This document shows, piece by piece, positions 10,009 through 60,229 of a DNA stretch of 64,000 bases. This stretch comes from Ylistrum balloti (lineage: Eukaryota), in the NCBI RefSeq assembly GCF_031769215.1, contig NW_026781921.1, forward strand, positions 1,426,001-1,490,000. The letters run 5' to 3'. The notes under the pieces are model-generated. The model was not told the DNA's origin and made no database searches. It saw nothing but the letters and a program-made list of their open reading frames with translations. Positions within the stretch are counted from its first letter, which is position 1, and each line of letters begins with the position of its first letter. Both the position numbers and the translations under genes were made by a program.

Positions 10009-12555
10009 TCATACAGTCTCTATCCCACTAGATGGATTAGATTGCGGTCCTCCATCCGGTGCTTGTGTTGTGTAGACCGGATCACGTTCAACAGTGTTAT
10101 CACAACCAGAAGGCAAAATGACCGACACACAATTGTCAGCATCGTCTATAACCAAATGCTCGCCACCAGAATTAGTCCTTTGAATATTCTGAATGGAGTT
10201 GGAATCTGCTACTGAGGGAGAGCCAAGGTCAGACATCACAGGACTGTTTGGAGTTTTACCTGTGAATATATTGCTAACAGCGATACCAGAAGGCAGAGGA
10301 GAAGCATGAACCCGAGACGGCTCATGCAGCACCAGTTCGCCTTCCACAACACTGGGATCGGGATCTGGGTCAAGGCCCACTTCAGATAAAAAACACTGCT
10401 CTGATGTGGGTGCCTGTTTTTTACTCCGTTTCCTGTGTGCACGCTTAGCAGTTTTCTTCTGTGTTTTATTCTGAGCTTCCTCAACCTTGACCTGAGTGTC
10501 ACTGTCCAAGGGTGTGTCTGAGAGAACAGCTGTGTAGGCCACAATGGGAGGTTTCTGTATTGGGGATGGTTCAAGAACCATGGTTTGAGTTGGCAAAGTC
10601 ACCATATTCCTTGTATCAGTGGGATCATACACCAATGCTGCTGGCTGCTCTAGCACTACAGTAACAGTATCGGGTGTTGGATCAGTCACAGCAATCACTG
10701 GAGTAGGATTGGCCACTGCGATGACAGGCGGGGGAACTGTCACCGTCATCACAGGCCCTGCAGGATTCATCTCTACAATGGTCTTGGCGGTGTCTCTGAC
10801 TGCCTCCTGCTCACAGTCAGCACCTTGGGATAAAAAACCTTGCTGTGAATCTGTCTGGCTGGTATCTTGCTGTTCTACATCTCCTCCCACTTCTGTGTTA
10901 CATACAGTGCTTGTCTCGCCTTCTGTTTCATTGTTGCTGAGATTAGTTTCAAACGAAAAAGCATTAGCTCCTGATGAGGCAGTGTCAGGGGCCTCTGCAG
11001 AGGATGGAACCTCAATAATGGGGCTAATCGGCTGGTGCTGTGACATATTTAAGAAGACACTTGGGGTAAAAGTCTGGCTTAGCAACAGCTTGAGTGGATC
11101 TTCCTCAGGCTTCTTCTCCTTTTCTTTAGGAACTTTCTCTGGTTCTGACCAGGATCTTTCCGTCACTTCCACTTTGAGATCTTGTATTGGCCCTTTGACT
11201 GGTTCTTCTGGTTTCTGCTGGTGATTAAGCTCGGATTTTGACCTATCTACAGAGACAGGCTTAGCCAGTGCAAGCTTGAGCAGTTGATATGCTGACAGTG
11301 GTTTCTCTTCTCTTTTTGGGACGGGTTCCACTTCCAGTTCTTCCTCATGTCCAGACACATGCCCAGACTTTCTACGATCACCTCCTCCACGCTCTCTTCG
11401 CCGACGTTGGAGACGTTCAGCAACTGTTTCTTCAGGGTCGAATCCAGGTGACTCACCTCTCTCAGAGATGGAAGTTTTTCGACTAGTTGACTCATCAAAA
11501 CTGTCAAAGCTTGCAGGCTTTTCTATTTTGTGTGTACTAGATTCATCCTTATGTGAACTACTGTCTTCAGACCCAAACATCTGTCTCCAGGTTCGGATAG
11601 CTGATCCCTTGTCCATTCGTGATGGAGACACAACTTTGACCTGTAATCTGTCAGGTGACAGTTGCTGTTGTTCCGGAACCCTCTCTACAACCTCCTCTGC
11701 TGGCTGTTCTTCCTCCATGTTCTCCTCCATTCTTTGTCGCCATGATTTCCTTCGAGTAAAGGCATCGTAAGTCTTTGGTTCCTCAGCAGCTGGTGAAGCC
11801 TCTTTTTCTTTTTTAGGTAATGTCAATTCAAGATGCTCTGGTTCAGCAACCTCTAGCTCTTTCTTCTGTCTCCATGCTTTAATGCTGAGCACCTCTGGCT
11901 CCGCGGCCTTGGTATCCACCACCGTTGTAGTCTGCTCTGTTGGTGGATTAGAGGCATAGTCATCCTTGGGTTTCTCTGTTTCACTGGCCATTTCCATCTC
12001 AAGTTTGAGACGCCATGACCTTGGCTTGTTAGGATCCTTAGGAGGAGACATTTTTGCTTGTGCTTCTGCAGCCTTTCTTTTCCTTTCTTTGTATGTTACA
12101 TAGCCACTTGTTTTCTCTGGTAGTACCTTGTTTGGCGTTTTCTGTTTCTTTGGAACCACCTCTGGAACTTTCTCCTCTACTTTCATTGGAATATTTTGTG
12201 CCACCTCTTGACTAGAACTCAGCTCTGTATGGTTCTGTTCAACATGGCTCACCTCACCAGAATCTTCCCTAGATTTGGCAGCTGATCTTGACCGGCGTTC
12301 TGAGGATTCCCTTTGTGATCCATTGGTTGGGACAGTCAGTTCTGCCATCTTTCCTTCTTCTAATGAAGCTGATTTTTTCCTCTCGGCTGGGTTGTCTAGA
12401 GGAAGACGTTCTGCATAAAATTTCCGACATGGACCAAAGAACGGATGGTTCATTGCCTCTCGTAAAGTAATGCGTTCCTCTGGTATGTACTCGAGCATCA
12501 TCTCAGTCAACTCAATCAGTTGCCGATGTTCTGGCCCCTTGTCTCGAATGTAATG
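10009..12555 (-). CDS. CLK2: Alternative terminal exon L: HYIRDKGPEHRQLIELTEMMLEYIPEERITLREAMNHPFF followed by an ~800-aa E/K/P/S/T-rich disordered tail (848 aa total, ends GIETV*)
   Basis: Acceptor ttgttgtttttcag|CAT at 12556-12558, phase 0. The stop-free 2547-nt frame is GC-richer than its surroundings. Its first ~40 aa align with kinase subdomain XI. Confidence 0.85.
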   Translation of the reverse strand, partial: HYIRDKGPEHRQLIELTEMMLEYIPEERITLREAMNHPFFGPCRKFYAERLPLDNPAERKKSASLEEGKMAELTVPTNGSQRESSERRSRSAAKSREDSGEVSHVEQNHTELSSSQEVAQNIPMKVEEKVPEVVPKKQKTPNKVLPEKTSGYVTYKERKRKAAEAQAKMSPPKDPNKPRSWRLKLEMEMASETEKPKDDYASNPPTEQTTTVVDTKAAEPEVLSIKAWRQKKELEVAEPEHLELTLPKKEKEASPAAEEPKTYDAFTRRKSWRQRMEENMEEEQPAEEVVERVPEQQQLSPDRLQVKVVSPSRMDKGSAIRTWRQMFGSEDSSSHKDESSTHKIEKPASFDSFDESTSRKTSISERGESPGFDPEETVAERLQRRRRERGGGDRRKSGHVSGHEEELEVEPVPKREEKPLSAYQLLKLALAKPVSVDRSKSELNHQQKPEEPVKGPIQDLKVEVTERSWSEPEKVPKEKEKKPEEDPLKLLLSQTFTPSVFLNMSQHQPISPIIEVPSSAEAPDTASSGANAFSFETNLSNNETEGETSTVCNTEVGGDVEQQDTSQTDSQQGFLSQGADCEQEAVRDTAKTIVEMNPAGPVMTVTVPPPVIAVANPTPVIAVTDPTPDTVTVVLEQPAALVYDPTDTRNMVTLPTQTMVLEPSPIQKPPIVAYTAVLSDTPLDSDTQVKVEEAQNKTQKKTAKRAHRKRSKKQAPTSEQCFLSEVGLDPDPDPSVVEGELVLHEPSRVHASPLPSGIAVSNIFTGKTPNSPVMSDLGSPSVADSNSIQNIQRTNSGGEHLVIDDADNCVSVILPSGCDNTVERDPVYTTQAPDGGPQSNPSSGIETV

Positions 12556-42900: not shown

Positions 42901-43756
42901 GAGAGGCCTTTATAGACAGGTTTGACATTTATATGATTTGATTTCCAATCCAATTTTGTTGGAAATTTTTTTTAATTCCAAATAAAAAATAAAAATGAAA
43001 AAAGTGTTATAGAAAAATTCAAAAGATTCTTTTGAACACCTAATCAGAAAGGTATCTGTATTCTGAGGCAATAAATATTGAATATTTCAAATGAAAAATG
43101 TTTCTGTTCAACTTCCAAAAATAAACACTAACAAAACAATACAATTCATCCTAATTTCCAAGAAATATATGTGATAATGATGGGAAATCGGTTAAAATCC
43201 ATAATCAGTTATCGTTTAAATTGATAGGCTTTTCTATGTAGTTAACCAATTACATAACCAGCTGACTGTATGTCCAATATTCATAGAAAATGAATGCATT
43301 CGCTATTAAAGTAATATTTTCTTTTCTTTTTTGAAACTTTAACCTAAATTACCTCACCATCTTTATATAGCAGAACATGAATTTGCTTTTTGATAAAACA
43401 CAAGAAAATATTACAGTACAGATGACTGATTATGATTTTCCCATCAGAAGAGGTTAGACTATTAGATAACATATCATATGCTATCATCGTAACATCACTG
43501 ATATATGATCAATCGTAAAACTAGATATAACTCAAAACCAGTTTCTGTTCAATTACAAAAAGAAAATAATGAACAATGAAATTTTGGGTATATGTTCACT
43601 GTTGAAACTACGGAACCCGATAGATATATAAGGGTTTTGAACTTTGGAAATGCTTCATACAGTAGGTATGGAAGCTGATAGTATTGTGTATCACTGAAGC
43701 ATTTCTGAGATTCTGCCTGCCATGTTAACACTAATTAATGTTTTACTTTGACCTAC

Positions 43757-43823
43757 CTTTGCATGTCCTTGACCTCCACAACCTTTCCAAAGGTACCTTC
43801 GCCTAGGGTGGAAACAATTTCAT
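43757..43823 (-). CDS. CLK2: CLK exon (Y)EIVSTLGEGTFGKVVEVKDMQ(R), Gly-rich loop, 67 nt
   Basis: ttgcag|AT ... AG|gtaggt; GxGxFG motif. Confidence 0.96.
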
Positions 43824-44623: not shown

Positions 44624-44708
44624 ATCGTGCTTGTAGGACATCGCCCGGCTGATAGATCAGATGGCCTTCTTCATCGTCCACAACCCTCGGACCAGCCTCA
44701 CTTTCATC
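44624..44708 (-). CDS. CLK2: CLK exon DESEAGPRVVDDEEGHLIYQPGDVLQAR(Y), 85 nt; equivalent of the regulated vertebrate CLK exon 4
   Basis: caacag|GAT acceptor and T|gtacac donor. The DDEEGHLI...GD.L..RY motif is typical of CLKs. Phase 0 in, phase 1 out. Confidence 0.92.
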
Positions 44709-45039
44709 CTGTTGCATCATCCCCACAACCACCAGGTGGCAGCACCCCAGCAATCACCCAACAGCAAAACAGCATCATCATGTCGTGGTAAGGGATGGCA
44801 GGAAGGCAGCACGGATGATACCCCAAACATCGTTCATTCATATTCAGATTTAATGATAGACAGCCCATAGTGTAGTCGGATCATTTTCATTGTCGGTTGA
44901 CCGGCAAGTCGAGTGGTAGGGCGCACATGAGATAGATAAGGGAGGCGAATGTGTCACAAAAAAATTACATCAGGACATCATCATCAATCAGCGTGTGCAA
45001 CATACATAACATTAAATGAGACAGCCACACTGCATGAGG

Positions 45040-46820: not shown

Positions 46821-49479
46821 GTTTTTCAGCACCTGATTTTGTAATGGGCCTGGCAAAAGCTATTTGATAACTCAAAGTCAATTCAGAATTATGAAATAAG
46901 TGACATTACTCGCAAATATTGTCTCAATCTATTAAGGTGGAAAGCCATTTTTGTTTACAGGTGACAGTGTTTTGTGCACAGACCATATCATATAAGACAC
47001 AGGAATTTACATAACCAGACTTTTCTTCAACAAATAAGGATTTTCTTTACATAGTTATCAATTAACCCCTTTGTGTGCATTTCTCAACAAAAACCAATTG
47101 TCATTGTACATAAGGTGATAAACTTGATATATATATATATCTATAAAACAATTTTTTTTAAAGAAGTTAAAAGACCATTTTACCATGATATCGGTTTAAA
47201 AAAGATCCCTAATCAATATTTCATACAACAAAGTATGTATACCTTGCCTAACAGTATACATTTACCACACCAACTTTTCACTAACAATCATTTTACCAGC
47301 TTAATTATTCTACATCAAACAAATATTACCAGTCTAACTTCATCAAACAGATTCCCTAGGACTTATGACCTGGTTATTGATACAGAGGGAGCTGACCCAC
47401 CAAATAACCATGGATATACAAAAACGTTTTCAGTGATTTTCCTTAATGTTTTAATAACTCTGCTTAAAGAGGTCAAGTATGGTTTGTCAGAGATCTGGGG
47501 CATGTCACAGTACAAATGTGATTAGTATTGGCATGCTGGTACACTGCCACTGTGGTTTGATGTCTATGTTGATACACGTGTTGGGTGTTTTCATGTTGCT
47601 ACATGCCACCATAGTTTTAAGTTAATACATCTTCATTTACTCTGGATTGCTGATGAATTGATAGATCGTATGGTTAAACATTGAAATATATCTCTATTCC
47701 CTCTCCAGACAGGGGGAAACAACAATATCTATTACATGTAAATCGTCTAAATTCGAAGTTTAACTGGAAACAAATGTAGATGTATTAATCCTTCAATCCC
47801 TTCAAATGAACTCTTCAAAGTTTGATTCCATACATGGAATGTTTCATTATACAGGTAGATGGGAGTGTCAGGGTTAATGGCGTTCAAAAATTTAATTTGA
47901 AACCCATGAAAGCTATGAAATGTTGCAGTAACGTAATACAAATTAATTAGTGTTTCATTAAGAACAGTTTTATCTGCAGCAAGCATGTCCATTTAGTCTC
48001 AATAACAATTTCTGGTCCTACAGTGTAGACACAAAACCTGATATCAAGTAGTGTTTCAGTAATGAAGAACAACCCACTACAACATTGAGAATATTGCAGC
48101 CAGTGGTTTACAACCTCTAATATTACAGTTTTATAGTCTATACTTTTAGAAAATTCCTGACTACAGTAAAAATTTGAATATCTTTAAGGAAATAATCAGC
48201 CATTCCTGTGATGTAAATTGGAAAGTCATTTTCCAGTATTTTTTCTATTGTTCACAAGATAAGGTAGTAAGTAACAACATTATGTTGTCTCCCTAGAAAT
48301 GATAAACAGTCCTTGTAGTCACCTGTCCATATTAACTGTCTACAAGCTTTTCCTGTTCTAAAGCTATTCAGTACCTGTTTATTTTACCATGAAGGCCAGA
48401 CCATTTTCTTTCTCCATCAGACTGAGAAAAACTATCTAACAAGCCAGAAAACCCTTGGAATCCCCAAAGTACAGATATACAAGGCTGGGTCAGATAACAC
48501 CACATTCCAATACACTCGTGGTTTTTATACCAGATCTAATCAAATTTATCAGGGGAGACAACTCTCTTTAAATGCAACGTTTAATGCCATTTTACTCCAC
48601 TTCTTCTGATATCTGGTCACCTGATGAGGTGACAAAGGCTATCTCATGCTTCAAATTACAAACTGGGAATTAAATTGGTTTCATTCAGATTTAAAGACCA
48701 GAAAGCTAAAAAGATTGGTAATACACAAAATGGCATCAGAAGGACGAATTAAAACGACTTTTGGATTGTTGTATTAATGACTCCCTTACAAAGAAGAAAC
48801 TTATATATAGAATGGTTGCATAAAAGGGAGCACAGGTGAAGACAGAAATCTAAGGTCATAAACCTTGGGAATTACAAAATTCGAGTGTGTTACAGTTTTG
48901 TTTATATCAACTAAGGATCTAAGCAGGTGACTGAAAAGCCACGTCTACTTCATGGGGTTGAAATTTCATCATTGTGAAGGAATGTATCAAAATATTTAAG
49001 GAAACTAAAACCATCAAAATATATATATATATGCCTCAGACATAATAATATAATTCTCTTCAACATGTAACTGATTATTTCAAAACATAAGAATATATCT
49101 CACGTTAATTCATTTGTAAGCAATTTTTGCCCCTAACTTGAACAATTTAGACCAATCAGCCCTATATTGAAAGTTCTGTTTGTTGTGAAATTCTCATGAA
49201 CATCACAGCTCATCAGGGAAGTGCTATTTATAAAAATAATAGCCGTATATATCTTGGTTCTCAAATAGCCACAGAGAATGGAAGTCTACCGGTCCATAAA
49301 ATTCAAAATCAATAAGAAGTCATGATAGATCAGAGTTGTACAGAAAGGAGAAGATAACCACGATAAGGTAAAGGGAGGTAACTTGGGTCTAGAAAAGAGA
49401 CTGATTGGTCCAAACAAGCTATAAAAAAAAAAAAACTGTTCAGATGTAACATAGGAAATGGCAATTAGAACTGACTTAC

Positions 49480-49647
49480 CGCGATATTCTGGTAGTCATT
49501 ATCATGTTTGTAGCTACTATAGCTGTACTGATTGTTGGTGAGAGAGCCATTGAGGCCAGATGAACTGGACGCTCCTGACAGGGTTTGTGTTGTAGGCATC
49601 ACTGCCCATTCCCTTATACCCGTCTGACTAAGGGCATCCACTCGCAT
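49480..49647 (-). CDS. Candidate alternative N-terminal coding exon MRVDALSQTGIREWAVMPTTQTLSGASSSSGLNGSLTNNQYSYSSYKHDNDYQNIA (56 aa)
   Basis: The open frame ends exactly at consensus donor GCG|gtaagt in phase 0, matching the 85-nt exon. There is an upstream in-frame stop at 49687-49689. Confidence 0.5.
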
Positions 49648-54200: not shown

Positions 54201-56045
54201 TCAACAAAATCTTATCTGTTCATAGCTCATGTTCGTAATACAGCTATGTGGCACAAAAATTGAAACAATTGTTACCTAGAGTGAATATAAATCAGGTTCC
54301 AAGAAAGACTGTTGACAACTCTCTCCTGGAACCAAGTCCTAGTTCCTATATAAGTATTCAGTTTTTTTGGTCACAGTAAATTCAGTTCACAAGTTACTAT
54401 AATCCAAATATCCAATCCATAAATTTTGACATGGTCAGTAACTGTGTCGTGGTCAAATTTTAAATTTCAGTTTTCTGTTCCCCATAAGACACAAATCAGC
54501 ATGTCTGCTTTCAACACAAAAGGAACGCATGTCTTGAGCTGCTGAGCCTAGACAATGGGACACTTCTAAAAAATGTTCATCAATTCCTGCAAGCCAGTAT
54601 TTTTTCCAGGACGTAAATGGCACAGACCTGAATTAGAATCGTCAAAAATACATGAAAGATGAAACCCTTGACAACCCTTCCTTCACATATTGATCTCTTC
54701 AAGTGAAAAATAATGAAGTTTTTGGAATACGAGATGGAACACACATGTGCGACAACCCTAAGCTGAACCGGAGAGGTATTACTGAGCCTAAACTACTAGT
54801 CTGCCAGGCACAAATAATCAATAAAAGGTCCAGCACGCAGTAATCACAGGATGCCATGTAGAAATTGCCTCCATTTTTTTGCCTAAAAAGCGTAACGACA
54901 GATTGTCATCCATTTGTCTGGATAATTAAATAATGCCCTCTGGGGCAATAAAGTCACAGATATTATAAACTTCCTTTCAACACAAACTTTCTACAATTTT
55001 GCCATTGCAAGAAAATACAGCCGAATAATAATAATTTAAAGTTTTTTTTCTCCAAATTTTTTATCATATTTGATATCAATGCACATGGACATGCAGCTGC
55101 TAAATTTTGAAATAATTTAGTATTTAAACAATACTCTGCTAGTGATAAAAATTGAAATTTAACAAATATTCTGCCTTTCAACACTTTTGATTCATCAGGT
55201 ATCTATTTTTTCTAATTAAATCTTAAATTGTGAATTTCAAAAATCTGTTTGAGTTGGGTCTAAATTTGTAATCACCATCAGTAAACAAAATGGCAGCCTC
55301 AGGGTGGTCCAAGGTAATGGACCACTTTGAGTTTTTTTAACAAAATAACAAGAAGAATAAGTCAATCACTGAGTGTAAATTGTGTAATATAACCCTAAAA
55401 CACCACACAATATTGACAACGTCCATGAATTATAATCTAAAACAAAAACACAGGGTAGACTTATTAATCAAATATACTTCTGCGTCTGCTCTCTCTGTCG
55501 GTAACAGCATGTAAACTTCGACCAAATTGACTGAAAAATGGAAGTCCTTCTTCTAATCAATTGAAAAAAGTAGACCAGGTGGATAGACTGATATTCTGTT
55601 TAACTATTTAAGAGAAAAGTGCTAAAACAGTCTAGTCGTAATTGCCATTCCTAATAACCTGACCAATCAAAAACTTTCTATTGTAATGCAATGTATCTAG
55701 TTCTTCCTGCTGATTTTAATTTCAGCTTTTTAAGAGCCTCAATTAAATGTTGTCTTTATTAGTGAATTGCTGGCAGAATCCTCCAAAGTAATTCGAATTT
55801 ATTAAGAGCGGTTGTACTTCTTGATTCGATTCGGAATTATTCAAACTGCGAAGCTGTGAACTGAACTCTATTGGATTTGTCCAACCCCGATTTTTCACTT
55901 AACTTATCTCAGAATATTCAATAATAAACTTTTATTTTTTGACTTATTAAAGTGTCTTTGCAATCATCACAATACTTGTATCAGTATATTTTTAAATAAT
56001 TGATTTATCAAACAGTAAACAAGCACTTTATCAACTTATCAAACA

Positions 56046-56220: not shown

Positions 56221-56777
56221 ATTATCTATTATTTATCTAGATTATTTATCATTTATTTATCAAAAAGTATATTCTTTATCAGTGGTGCATGAAATTGTTT
56301 AAGAATATATTTTTGTCCTCAGTTATTGTTTAAATATATATTTAAATTTCTCTATTATATATCATATACTACTTTTTAAACAATTGAATTATCACACATC
56401 AGAGTGCAGCTGTATAAAAAACATTTTCAAAGTTTTTTCATCCTCAATTGTTTAAAATTCTTCATTGTCCCTCCTATAAATCTCCATGTATTGATCGCCA
56501 ATTTGTTTATGTATTACCAACTGACATTTTCCCATATGAGAGCACACATATGTACACTCGGTGCACTGGCACTGCCTGATAATTTTACTCTTCCAGATCA
56601 CTGTAGAGTTAAATCTCACTGTCTATAACACAAATTATACTTACAATCTTAACTTATAGTAGCACACTGCTACTCCTACCCAAAATCAAACAAAGAGCAG
56701 ACAACTCATCATTGACTTTTCTCACTCAATGCTAAGTGTTTATCTGACAATCTTACACAAGTACAGGTTTGACTTAC

Positions 56778-56790
56778 CTCCTTGATCCAG
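56778..56790 (-). CDS. Candidate 13-nt microexon CTGGATCAAGGAG (LDQG+G)
   Basis: tgttttccctgtgtgttactttttaacag|13 nt|gtaagtc. Confidence 0.5.
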
Positions 56791-57090
56791 CTGTTAAAAA
56801 GTAACACACAGGGAAAACATGCACACGGGAAGGGATGGGTCATATACAAAGACTTTCATCACAGAGGAAATCAGGGGACTATTAATAATCTTCTACCTTT
56901 CCTTGTTTACCTATAGCTATTTGAGATACATGTTTTTCTCCTACTCGTCTTACTATAAAATATTCCTGATAAAATACTAGCTGTCAAAGACCCTTGATTA
57001 TCTACCACTTACCCAAGTGTGTTTGGGGGACAAAGCGGTGAAAAATCACTACTGCTGATGAACTGATTTAAATGAAATGTTTAATCTTAC

Positions 57091-57120
57091 TTCTTGAAGT
57101 GACCGAGATCTTTTGAACTT
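57091..57120 (-). CDS. Candidate 30-nt in-frame microexon KFKRSRSLQE (27 nt with the NAGNAG acceptor)
   Basis: atttctttttaatcctctaattcattgaag|AAG...GAA|gtaaga; phase 0-0; RS dipeptides. Confidence 0.3.
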
Positions 57121-57711
57121 CTTCAATGAATTAGAGGATTAAAAAGAAATAATCTTTTTTTCGAAATTCAAAACTTCATCTTTCCAAAGAAATTGCTAAA
57201 GATGACTCCAACATTTTTTTAATGTAAATATTTCTTACATGTCATATCTATCATTAGCATAAAAATAACAGACCTACATTTTTAACTTGATATTTGAAAA
57301 AAAAATGTTATCCATCTCATTCATACACTTTGGTTAATGAATGAAAATCAGTAGACACCTCCCAAAACCTAATCTCTATTGTTATAACCACCAGCAATAA
57401 CACCCAGTCTGTTGTATCATCAGGAGTAAGTAGTCAGGACATACTTAAGGGAACTATTAACTATAAAGTTCACATCAGCAGTTACCTCCCTTTGACAAGG
57501 CCACAAATAAGAAAGAAGAGTTCATTGTTTATAATGAAATACTAATGAGACACAAAACTGAGCATCATATACACAAAGATTTCTTTTATAAATGGAATGA
57601 AGTTTTCCTGAGTTTGTATATGGTCAAAGGGAAGTAACTGTGAGGTGAGAGCCTAACTCTGCCTATGCTATGGTATGGTTCAGGCCTACATATACATAGA
57701 ACAACTCCTAC

Positions 57712-57979
57712 CTTGCTGGAGTCAGAACTGAAAGTTGTATGTCTTCGATGACGATAACTCCGTCTTCTGTGCCGCCGCCGAGGCCGATTCCGACTGTGAC
57801 GACTGTTGTCACGAGACCGGTAGTGGCTGCCATGATCTGATTCATCATAGTGACGACTGATGCGGCTGCGGCTGTGGTAATCCCAGCGATCTCTCTCTGG
57901 GGTGTAGGATCGGTCCCGGTAGCTATTGTTGTCTTGGTAGTCATGGTAATGGTCTCGCTCCCTTCGCCGCCTGTCACCA
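57712..57979 (-). CDS. CLK2: CLK exon: Arg/Ser/His-rich N-terminal domain (GDRRRRERDHYHDY...RSRISRH...RPRRRHRRRSYRHRRHTTFSSDSSK), 268 nt, phase 2 in / phase 0 out
   Basis: Acceptor ttgcag| at 57980-57982 and donor AAG|gtagga. The open frame differs from the ORF-track frame and gives the RS-rich composition typical of CLK N-termini. Confidence 0.9.
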
Positions 57980-60229
57980 CTGCAACATCAATTAAACACA
58001 ACTACAAAGTTATTCTTGTTTTGGACTGCAACATCAATAGTGTGGTAGAGAAACATAAATGTATGGCAAGTCTGCTCTACAAACATCAATAAAAGAAAAA
58101 AATATTTTTCTGCAATATTAACTTGATTGTTAACTTATCAAACTTATTGCCAGCCTGTTCTACGGCATGGTTAGAAACCTAAAGTTATTGCCTGTCCATT
58201 CTACAACATCGTTAGAAATGTACGTTTTTCGATCACTTGTCCATTCCACAAGTCCTATATATAGTGTTTTATTTGCAGAAATGTCTGAAATTATCCATTC
58301 AAATTTGATAGAAAATCTTCAGTATACCAGGGTACATATCTGATAACAAGCAGTACAGTTGTTCTCTGATATTCTGACACTGCTCTAGAATTTTCCAGCA
58401 GTACATGGTCCCTTCTCCTTAGTTCCTTTATCACAATAAGGTAGTAATATGTAATCAATGATTCAATTTAAAACAATTTTAAATTATATTTTCAAAAAGT
58501 CATTGTGGTGGCCATTTTAAACAAATTAAAACAGTCCTGATGTGTGAACTTTGTGGTAATTTAAAAACAAACTGAAAGAAAAACACTAAAATTGATATGC
58601 CATAATTCTCAATATTCACTCAAATATGGCAATGTTACCATTATATCTCTCTACCTCAGGACATAGAGAAAACTTCTCTAATGCTATACAGTGCTTGTAC
58701 CAAAAAGACTATAAACTGAATCATAAGTGAATATCTAGAACAACAAAACAAACAATTTCAAAAAAATACACAAAAAAAAACTGAGTTGGTTCATATGTCT
58801 GTACAACAATTTTACTTCTAACTTGGTTTGATATAAATAGCAGTTGAACTTAATGACACACTGACATAAATGCCAAACATCCAAAGTCATGTGCTCATCA
58901 TCTGATTTTCAGTGTTGCTGGATAGTAAAGTCTGAAGATATTTTGCAATTGATGAATGTATTGAGGTGCTTATAATGTGACCTAGCTGTATGGAGTGGTC
59001 ACCACTTAATGTGACTCCTGTTAATGTAACTTTCCTGTTAATATGATATTTTCTTGAAACATCAATATTCCCTATATATTCTATGTAATCTAACATCTGA
59101 TAATGTTACTGATTTTCATATAGCCCATGCTTAAATAGCCATTATGTCACTGATGCAATTTTAAGCTATAAAAATAGGACTTAATGAAAGTAGTGAAAGT
59201 TCTTCACTTTACACTAATACAACCGGTACAGTCTAAAGGTCATCCAGAGTTCTTACATATCAAAAGACATGTTTACTTCTACCAGAATTACAAAAATTAA
59301 TACCATCAGCGGGTTTAAATACCAGCATGCCCAGTAAAGTTGTTGTAGTTTACAAACACAAATCAACTGGCTGACTGAGGCAGTTGTCAGATTTTCAGTT
59401 GAGAAACAAAGAACCAAATAAGCAGGTTAGTGAGGGACAGAAAAGTCTATTCGTAAAGCTGTTGAAAGGTAACAGAGCCAACTCACTTCAGACAAACATT
59501 CATGCTTCAATTAGACAGCGGTAAAAAAAGATGTTTTACTCGAAGTTTTACTCACTACTATTCTTTAATTTACTCTTTGAACCATTTTATAGAATGGCAC
59601 TACATATATGTATGTCTTAAACATAATTTAAGCCAAATTTTTTTTACCATATTTCAACTTCTCTTTACATGATACACATGGTTGTAGGGTGGGGAATCCC
59701 CATGCTGTGCTATGTCTGTGATGTCATATATATTTAATAATAAAGTTGATGAAGGAATGATAGAATATTCAAGTGCCGATGAATAAAGACATTGTTTAGA
59801 CATAATACATGTATTATCTGTTCAAATCAATGCTTAGTTCCTCACTGTTAGGCATATGTCCTGGAATGATCCTAGTTTAGTTTAATTTAAGCAATCAGGG
59901 ATACATCCATATTATAATAACTACTTACATTTACTTCAATATGTTACCATTTAATCTATATTGAACACATATAGTAGCAGTATAGTATCTAACGTATTTC
60001 CACCAAATGGATTTATATCATGACGTCACCAAAACACTGCATCATTGTTTCTGTGTACTATCTATGACATCAACTTTTAACAACATGTGAAGTTGTTCGG
60101 CAGAGGTATTATATAAGTCCTATATTTTGCACTGTTACCCCGTTCTGAAGACGACATACCTAGTATGTCCAAATATACATAAAAGTTAAAGCCTGGTGAT
60201 GATCTTCCCTGGATGTTGTCTGGTCATCT

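What the first reader, a model, noticed from the sequence alone, without database searches (positions are those of the whole stretch)
56772..56830. 13-nt microexon that is frame-equivalent to the 85-nt exon
The context is strong: tgcatgttttccctgtgtgttactttttaacag|CTGGATCAAGGAG|gtaagt, with a UGCAUG (RBFOX) hexamer at 56818-56823. Both 13 and 85 equal 1 mod 3. Included with the 85-nt exon it makes ...LDQG GGA TGA, an immediate stop (poison). Included instead of it, it restores frame (SSK-LDQG-D-EIVSTLGEG) and rescues exon skipping with a kinase lacking the DDEEGHL segment. One microexon could therefore invert the logic of the autoregulatory switch (inference).
Basis: partly seen in the sequence, partly recalled or inferred. 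Interest (0 to 1): 0.72.

Follow-up and report, generated by a model that had tools for sequence, protein, structure and literature searches.

The report
Conserved frame-breaking microexon in scallop CLK
A 13-base mini-exon with strong splice signals lies in a long intron of the scallop's only CLK (splicing-control kinase) gene and is kept in four scallop genera, but its length switches between 13 and 14 bases, so the shared effect is to break the reading frame, not to rescue it.

Summary
On the minus strand a polypyrimidine tract and CAG, a 13-nt body (56790-56778) and GTAAGT sit 921 nt downstream of the RS-domain exon of the single CLK gene of Ylistrum balloti. TGCATG lies at 56823-56818.

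In one genome such a pair is at chance level: about 1.7 are expected per strand per 64 kb. Conservation is what lifts it. Only 15% of the 13-kb intron aligns in Pecten, Mizuhopecten and Argopecten together, and the element lies in one of 12 such islands. CAG, GAG|GTAAGTCAAA, the pyrimidine tract and TGCATG are invariant. It is the only one of 9 GTRAGT hexamers in the intron that is invariant in all four genera.

The body is 13 nt in Ylistrum and Mizuhopecten and 14 nt in Pecten and Argopecten. Included with the 85-nt exon it gives a premature stop in all four. Included instead of that exon it keeps frame only in the 13-nt species and gives an immediate TGA in the 14-nt species.

Best reading: a Pectinidae-wide poison (or decoy) microexon acting only on RS-promoter transcripts. 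The "logic inversion" is lineage-specific arithmetic.

No RNA evidence could be reached, so use of the exon is unproven.

The parts
56778..56790 (-). Candidate cassette microexon, 13 nt (CTGGATCAAGGAG). It enters in phase 0 after ..SSK.
   Evidence: Orthologous bodies: 14 nt in Pecten L003:10316-10329, 13 nt in Mizuhopecten L004:12137-12149, 14 nt in Argopecten L002:30609-30622.
56791..56817 (-). 3' splice region: polypyrimidine tract (70% Y) ending in ACAG.
   Evidence: 17 of the last 25 columns are invariant in 4 genera and ACAG is invariant.
56818..56823 (-). UGCAUG hexamer (RBFOX-type motif), 28-33 nt upstream of the 3' splice site.
   Evidence: It is one of only two TGCATG in the 13-kb intron and the only one invariant in all four genera. 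In Pecten it is kept despite a local 2-nt shift.
56768..56777 (-). 5' splice site GTAAGTCAAA. With the exon's last GAG it gives GAG|GTAAGT, a near-perfect match to U1.
   Evidence: It is the only one of 9 GTRAGT hexamers in the intron that is invariant in all four genera.
56742..56834 (-). Conserved intronic island around the microexon, alignable in all three other genera. It extends to about 56503-56878 against Pecten and Mizuhopecten.
   Evidence: one of 12 islands, which together make up 15% of the intron. 61% of columns are invariant within +/-45 nt.
57712..57979 (-). Upstream RS-rich exon (ends ..FSSDSSK, phase 0, donor gtagga). The 101 nt of intron after it are also conserved.
   Evidence: It matches the N-termini of P0004, P0007 and P0008.
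49480..49647 (-). Coding part of the alternative first exon (MRVD...QNIA, donor GTAAGT at 49479) that splices straight to the 85-nt exon. It lies downstream of the microexon, so RS-less transcripts cannot contain the microexon.
   Evidence: RefSeq proteins P0001, P0002 and P0003 start with it. It is conserved in three genera.
44624..44708 (-). Regulated 85-nt exon encoding DESEAGPRVVDDEEGHLIYQPGDVLQAR, with a weak donor (gtacac). It is the counterpart of mammalian CLK1 exon 4.
   Evidence: 94-99% identical in the other scallops.
43756..43823 (-). Gly-loop exon ((Y)EIVSTLGEGTFGKVVEVKDMQR).

Best explanation
The element is an alternative, frame-shifting 'poison' microexon of the single CLK gene of scallops (family Pectinidae).

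How it would work:
- It is defined by a conserved pyrimidine tract with CAG and a near-consensus GAG|GTAAGT donor, 13-14 nt apart.
- It can be spliced only into transcripts from the upstream (RS-domain) promoter, between the RS exon and the 85-nt exon.
- Because its length is never a multiple of three, inclusion together with the normally included 85-nt exon puts a stop codon in or right after the junction, many exon junctions upstream of the true stop.
- The message then either encodes only the RS domain (like mammalian truncated CLK1) or is removed by nonsense-mediated decay.
- The purine-rich body (GGA/GAA/GAG) and the conserved upstream UGCAUG are the likely handles for SR-protein and RBFOX-type regulators. 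This would give a second route, besides 85-nt exon skipping, by which CLK activity feeds back on its own productive mRNA.

What is shown: the sequence, its conservation, and the frame consequences in four genera.
What is inferred: that the exon is spliced in, that NMD follows, and which factors regulate it.
For: - Exact anatomy confirmed.
- Single copy, not a repeat.
- Only 15% of the intron aligns in all three other genera, and the element lies in one of those islands.
- ACAG, GAG|GTAAGTCAAA, the Y-tract and TGCATG are invariant in four genera, while the interior of the body varies and carries the only indel of the core.
- It is the only invariant GTRAGT among 9 in the intron. Background hexamer invariance in aligned blocks is 21%, and 9% for 10-mers.
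- A blind pattern scan recovers the same element in each of the four orthologous introns, each with TGCATG upstream, at a similar distance (768-921 nt) from the RS exon.
- A premature stop arises with the 85-nt exon in all four species.
- Pecten RefSeq isoform X3 (P0006) starts at the Met inside the Gly-loop exon. So at least one supported Pecten transcript has a broken frame upstream.
- CLK genes are known to be controlled by unproductive splicing at this very position (CLK1 exon 4, PMC11571805).
- There is only one CLK gene in this genome.
Against: - No RNA evidence at all. The only run holding the locus is DNA contigs, and no scallop transcript-derived protein fragments are in the collections.
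- Four genera are few. The body (8 of 14 columns invariant) is not significantly less conserved than its flanks (61%).
- The island is one of 12, so it could be a conserved non-coding element of another kind.
- The element was not found in the orthologous introns of Potamilus and Mercenaria.
- Exons of 13-14 nt flanked by introns of 0.9 and 12 kb are hard to define without dedicated factors.
- The Fox-1_C search of the genome was blank and uninformative.
Confidence: 0.47

Rival explanations
1. Decoy (pseudo-)exon. The conserved 3'ss/5'ss pair binds U2AF/U2 and U1 but is rarely or never included. At only 13-14 nt apart the two complexes hinder each other. The stalled pair then delays removal of the long intron (intron detention) or shifts the choice at the weak 85-nt exon.
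For: The splice signals are conserved while body length and sequence drift. The 85-nt exon has a weak donor. Intron retention next to the regulated exon is seen in Mytilus transcripts from two assemblies. It is also known for mammalian CLK1 and for OGT decoy exons (papers listed; otherwise own knowledge).
Against: No RNA data. A decoy does not require the length to stay off a multiple of three, though with one inferred indel event that constraint is weakly tested anyway. There is no evidence that this particular intron is detained in scallops.
Confidence: 0.2
2. A conserved non-coding element unrelated to splicing, for example an enhancer for the alternative promoter about 7 kb downstream. The splice-like motifs would be coincidental.
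For: The intron holds 12 conserved islands, some larger and better conserved (54916-54547). The single-genome pattern is at chance level. The body is no less conserved than its flanks.
Against: About 0.05 candidates are expected by chance in the 1.9 kb of islands. All 8 core splice columns being invariant has P of about 0.02 given the block's 61% invariance. It is the only invariant GTRAGT of 9. The same pair is recovered independently in each genus. No Rfam family matches and there is no convincing conserved fold.
Confidence: 0.25
3. The microexon is a frame-equivalent substitute for the 85-nt exon, selected to produce a kinase without the DDEEGHL segment and so to invert the autoregulatory switch.
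For: 13 = 85 = 1 mod 3. The microexon-only form reads SSK-LDQG-D-EIVSTLGEG in Ylistrum and LEPR-D-EIVSTLGEG in Mizuhopecten.
Against: In the 14-nt species (Pecten, Argopecten) the same combination gives an immediate TGA, yet the signals are equally conserved. The lost segment is near-invariant across phyla and is part of the crystallised CLK domains. No such isoform appears among about 30 inspected CLK proteins, and the one look-alike was an artefact.
Confidence: 0.06

Closest known systems
Mammalian CLK1 exon 4 switch (skipping gives truncated, kinase-less CLK1; flanking introns are retained)
   Same: Same gene family and same position: between the RS domain and the Gly-loop, at the DDEEGHL-coding exon. 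Same outcome: an RS-only product or an unproductive mRNA. Presumed feedback through SR proteins (PMC11571805).
   Different: In mammals the frame is broken by skipping a constitutive-type exon. Here the proposal is inclusion of an extra 13-14-nt exon 12 kb upstream of that exon. No such microexon is described for CLK in the papers searched.
Poison cassette exons of SR proteins and other splicing regulators (NMD-coupled unproductive splicing)
   Same: A conserved alternative exon whose inclusion introduces a premature stop far upstream of the last junction. It has conserved intronic flanks and lies in a gene of the splicing-regulation network.
   Different: Classical poison exons are tens to hundreds of nt long, carry their own stop and are often ultraconserved across vertebrates. 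This one is 13-14 nt, acts by frameshift, and is conserved only within Pectinidae as far as tested.
Neural microexons (3-27 nt; SRRM4/RBFOX-regulated)
   Same: Length class, strong splice sites, highly conserved flanking intron sequence, and UGC/UGCAUG upstream of the 3' splice site.
   Different: Most neural microexons are multiples of three and remodel protein surfaces. This one shifts the frame in all four genera. Tissue specificity is unknown.
Recursive splice sites / RS-exons in long introns
   Same: A strong 3'ss closely followed by a strong 5'ss inside a long (13-kb) intron.
   Different: The defining AG|GTRAGT juxtaposition, which regenerates a 5' splice site, is absent. The junction would read AAG|CTGGAT.

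Membership tests
Poison cassette exon (unproductive splicing coupled to NMD) | Flanked by usable 3' and 5' splice sites | tested here: met
   Y-tract with CAG, and GAG|GTAAGT, invariant in 4 genera. This is sequence-level evidence only.
Poison cassette exon (unproductive splicing coupled to NMD) | Inclusion creates a premature stop upstream of further exon junctions | tested here: met
   With the 85-nt exon the stop comes at once (13-nt species) or after 17 codons (14-nt species). At least 10 introns lie downstream.
Poison cassette exon (unproductive splicing coupled to NMD) | Inclusion seen in RNA; the isoform rises when NMD is blocked | not testable with these tools
   The only run found is DNA contigs. 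No scallop transcript fragments are in the protein collections.
Poison cassette exon (unproductive splicing coupled to NMD) | Conservation of the exon and flanking intron above the neutral background | tested here: met
   It lies in one of 12 islands in an intron that is otherwise 85% unalignable across all genera. Not found in Potamilus or Mercenaria.
Neural-type microexon | Length 3-27 nt with conserved intronic flanks | tested here: met
   13/14 nt. About 45 nt conserved on each side.
Neural-type microexon | Frame-preserving (multiple of 3), modulating a protein surface | tested here: not met
   Length mod 3 is 1 or 2 in the four genera.
Neural-type microexon | Neural or muscle-specific inclusion dependent on SRRM4/RBFOX | not testable with these tools
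   No RNA data. The conserved UGCAUG is only a motif. The Fox-1_C genome search was blank and its controls were also blank.
Recursive splice site / RS-exon | 3' splice site directly followed by GTRAGT, so that a 5' splice site is regenerated after the first step | tested here: not met
   The sequence after the AG is CTGGA / CTAGA in all four genera.
CLK (LAMMER) kinase gene with an exon-4-type switch | Frame-shifting exon encoding the DDEEGHL...LQAR segment just before the Gly-loop exon | tested here: met
   The 85-nt exon matches CLK1 residues 141-160 and the N-termini of the CLK2 and CLK3 constructs. Plain skipping gives MKLFPP-stop in Ylistrum, Pecten and Mizuhopecten.
   Met in Ylistrum and Mizuhopecten (13 nt). 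Not met in Pecten and Argopecten (14 nt).

The most novel reading that the evidence does not exclude
In the 13-nt lineages (Ylistrum, Mizuhopecten) the microexon and the 85-nt exon form a frame-compensating pair. Productive mRNA then arises from either exon alone but not from both or neither (an XOR gate). The microexon-only message yields a CLK whose conserved N-terminal DDEEGHL extension is replaced by four residues. This would be a differently regulated or differently targeted kinase that evolved from an ancestral pure poison or decoy exon by a 1-nt indel.
Probability: 0.06. Interest if true: 0.7.

Novelty: new member of a known kind. Interest (0 to 1): 0.4.

Why it matters
CLK kinases set the phosphorylation state of SR proteins and are themselves tuned by unproductive splicing. 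In mammals this loop underlies temperature- and stress-responsive splicing.

A conserved poison or decoy microexon in a mollusc's sole CLK gene would matter in three ways:
- It would show that invertebrates have added a second, promoter-specific brake at the same junction. It can only hit RS-domain transcripts, not the RS-less isoform from the internal promoter.
- It would be a rare case of a frame-shifting microexon used as an on/off device.
- The 13/14-nt polymorphism between genera gives a natural experiment that separates "poison" from "rescue" functions.

If it is never spliced, it is simply one more conserved intronic element.

Tried and rejected
1. RNA evidence. The look-up of sequencing runs on the RS exon returned one run, which read laying showed to be genomic contigs running through the introns. 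There were no joints and only SNPs (nearest at 56834). This says nothing for or against expression.
2. A search for N-terminal truncated products with P0007:1-164 gave only P0010, an ORF read through exon and intron on a 933-nt genomic contig that stops short of the microexon.
3. Mytilus P0025 (MLNFSD-EVISTLGEG) looked like a DDEEGHL-less isoform. Contigs L008 and L009 show it is a TTG-start gene call inside a retained intron (..tttttcag|ATGAGGTG). Rejected.
4. Conservation beyond scallops. Short BLAST hits in Potamilus (15 nt) and Mercenaria (12 nt) have no splice context. The Solemya locus was too long to fetch. The oyster and Mytilus isoforms tried were not on record.
5. Structured RNA or snoRNA. 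No Rfam hit at E<=1. RNAalifold gave -7 kcal/mol over 150 columns with almost no covariation.
6. Recursive splice site: rejected, because there is no GT after the AG.
7. The protein tree of the four scallops was unresolved. Quartet site patterns on the tail-exon DNA favour Ylistrum+Mizuhopecten | Pecten+Argopecten at 71:38:37, so a single indel may explain 13 vs 14. This is a single gene, not a species tree.
8. The Fox-1_C (PF12414) search of the genome was blank, and so were the controls. It is uninformative.
9. A metagenome pattern scan for the donor flank gave nothing.
Exons were searched by reference one at a time, and frames were worked out exon by exon.

Full report
**What the window is.** The long terminal-type exon at 10015-12555 (minus strand) is 100% identical to XP_060084793.1 of Ylistrum balloti, Ballot's saucer scallop. 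The window is G000:C64:1426001-1490000 of a 648-Mb assembly. A CLK/LAMMER kinase gene runs along the minus strand. A search with a kinase exon finds only this locus, so it is the only CLK gene detected in the genome.

The exons relevant here are:
- the RS-rich exon, 57979-57712, ending ..FSSDSSK in phase 0;
- an alternative first exon, with ATG at 49647 and donor at 49479, with which RefSeq proteins of Ylistrum, Pecten and Mizuhopecten begin;
- the 85-nt exon, 44708-44624;
- the Gly-loop exon, 43823-43756.

The 85-nt exon encodes the DDEEGHL..LQAR segment. That segment aligns to CLK1 residues 141-160 and to the N-termini of the crystallised CLK2 and CLK3 constructs. This makes it the counterpart of mammalian CLK1 exon 4, whose skipping yields a kinase-less variant (PMC11571805).

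**Check of the observation.** The sequence is exactly as described: TGCATG at 56823-56818, a 70% pyrimidine tract ending ACAG, the body CTGGATCAAGGAG at 56790-56778, then GTAAGTC.

The frame arithmetic also holds:
- after ..SSK, the microexon plus the 85-nt exon reads LDQG-G-stop;
- the microexon joined directly to the Gly-loop exon reads LDQG-D-EIVSTLGEG;
- plain skipping of the 85-nt exon reads MKLFPP-stop.

The stretch is single copy in the genome.

As a pattern in one genome it is not remarkable. Markov-1 shuffles of the window give 1.7 +/- 1.2 pairs of this kind per strand (0.9 if GTAAGT is required). Two were observed on the minus strand and none on the plus strand.

**Conservation.** I fetched the orthologous loci of Argopecten irradians (L002), Pecten maximus (L003) and Mizuhopecten yessoensis (L004).
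- The intron between the RS exon and the 85-nt exon is 11.7-14.7 kb in these species. It is mostly unalignable: 15-33% of the Ylistrum intron aligns per species, and 15% aligns in all three, as 12 islands.
- The microexon lies in island 56834-56742.
- In the four-genus alignment the invariant parts are ACAG, the first CT and last GAG of the body, GTAAGTCAAA, most of the pyrimidine tract and TGCATG. In Pecten the TGCATG is kept despite a local 2-nt shift.
- Of 9 GTRAGT hexamers in the Ylistrum intron, 3 fall in blocks aligned in all genera, and only this one is invariant. Of 2 TGCATG, only this one is invariant. Background invariance is 21% for hexamers and 9% for 10-mers.
- Within +/-45 nt, 61% of columns are invariant. 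That gives about 0.02 for all eight core splice columns being invariant by chance.
- A blind pattern scan of each orthologous intron recovers the same element in each genus, always with TGCATG upstream. It lies 768-921 nt from the RS exon.
- The body itself (8 of 14 columns invariant) is not significantly less conserved than its flanks, but it carries the only indel in the core.

**The decisive detail.** The body is 13 nt in Ylistrum and Mizuhopecten and 14 nt in Pecten and Argopecten.

| Combination | 13-nt species (Ylistrum, Mizuhopecten) | 14-nt species (Pecten, Argopecten) |
|---|---|---|
| Microexon + 85-nt exon | Immediate stop | Stop after 17 codons |
| Microexon without the 85-nt exon | Stays in frame | Immediate TGA |

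These consequences were worked out exon by exon. The property shared by all four genera is therefore frame disruption. Frame equivalence with the 85-nt exon is confined to two genera.

Quartet site patterns on 2.4 kb of tail-exon DNA favour the split Ylistrum+Mizuhopecten | Pecten+Argopecten (71:38:37). One 1-nt indel may therefore explain the difference. The protein tree was unresolved.

**Limits of conservation and other negatives.**
- The element was not found in the orthologous introns of the unionid Potamilus (L006) or the venerid Mercenaria (L007). The best short matches there have no splice context.
- No Rfam family matches, and there is no convincing conserved fold.

**Transcript evidence.** None could be obtained.
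- The single run holding the locus consists of genomic contigs.
- The protein collections hold no transcript-derived scallop fragments of this gene.
- Indirectly, Pecten RefSeq isoform X3 starts at the Met inside the Gly-loop exon. This implies a supported transcript whose frame is broken upstream, but it does not say how.
- A Mytilus protein that seemed to lack the DDEEGHL segment proved to be a gene call starting in a retained intron.
- Across about 30 CLK proteins from molluscs to vertebrates the DD.EGHL.Y..GD.LQARY segment is nearly invariant, and none lacks it.

**Interpretation.** The best-supported reading (about 0.47) is a Pectinidae-wide poison microexon.
- It would be used only in transcripts from the upstream promoter, because the alternative first exon lies 7 kb downstream of it.
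- Its inclusion shifts the frame and ends translation just after the RS domain. The result is an RS-only protein or an NMD substrate.
- This is the same outcome as 85-nt exon skipping, so it is a second brake rather than an inverter.
- The purine-rich body and the conserved upstream UGCAUG are plausible handles for SR proteins and RBFOX-type factors. By the established position rule, an upstream UGCAUG represses inclusion. These last points are inference.

The rivals are:
- a decoy exon that stalls intron removal without being included (0.20);
- an unrelated conserved non-coding element (0.25);

A recursive splice site is excluded, because no GT follows the AG.

**Novelty and score.** Poison exons in splicing regulators and the CLK exon-4 switch are well known. 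I found no paper describing a frame-shifting microexon in a CLK gene. Without RNA evidence I rate this a probable new member of a known kind, with interest 0.4.

**Procedural notes.**
- Read laying was given 1,901 letters.

Noticed in passing
window 54547-54916 (minus strand), orthologues L003:11905-12352, L004:14710-15308, L002:32072-32458: The largest conserved island of the intron (about 370 nt, 73-81% identity). It has long runs invariant in four scallop genera, for example around GACAAATGGATGACAATCTGTCGTTAC and CTTTCATGTATTTTTGACGATTCTAATTCA. No splice-site pair is conserved in all four. It could be an enhancer for the internal promoter or another regulated exon.
   Followed up: partly
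L008:1-545 and L009:1-145 (Mytilus-type transcript contigs from two ENA assemblies): These transcripts are spliced through the whole kinase domain but retain the intron just upstream of the Gly-loop exon (..tttttcag|ATGAGGTG). This resembles the retained or detained introns flanking mammalian CLK1 exon 4. Protein P0025 is a TTG-start call within that intron.
   Followed up: yes
P0017 / P0138 (oyster Logan transcripts, 13 contigs of about 2.3 kb): The ORFs start at the Val of IVDDADGHL, read as Met, inside the 85-nt-equivalent exon. Many oyster transcripts therefore carry an in-frame stop just upstream of it, from a poison exon, a retained intron or a non-coding first exon.
   Followed up: no
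P0006 (Pecten maximus isoform X3, XP_033727019.1): This RefSeq isoform begins at the Met of ..VKDMQRNGERL in the Gly-loop exon. The transcript model therefore has a disrupted frame upstream, which is consistent with unproductive splicing in scallops.
   Followed up: partly
L007:14350-14361 (Mercenaria mercenaria, orthologous intron): A 12-nt microexon-like pair with an 85% pyrimidine tract (..tttttccag|CTTTCTGATTGG|gtgagtac), 2.7 kb after the RS exon. In phase 0 it would insert LSDW in frame. It is unrelated in sequence to the scallop element, and its conservation was not tested.
   Followed up: no
window 49480-49647 (minus strand): The alternative first exon (MRVD...QNIA) is used by RefSeq proteins of Ylistrum, Pecten and Mizuhopecten. 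A counterpart (MRVDYLQ..., MRVDGIY...) opens oyster and Mytilus proteins. The RS-less CLK isoform is therefore conserved across pteriomorph bivalves.
   Followed up: partly
window 57611-57711 and 44709-44994 (minus strand): The first 101 nt of intron after the RS exon and the last 286 nt before the 85-nt exon are conserved in all four genera (86% and 79-89% identity). This is typical of regulated splice sites.
   Followed up: partly
window 56300-58200 versus run X1: A second individual's DNA contigs differ at 14 single bases and one 1-nt insertion in 1.9 kb (about 0.8%). None falls in 56742-56833; the nearest is G>A at 56834.
   Followed up: yes
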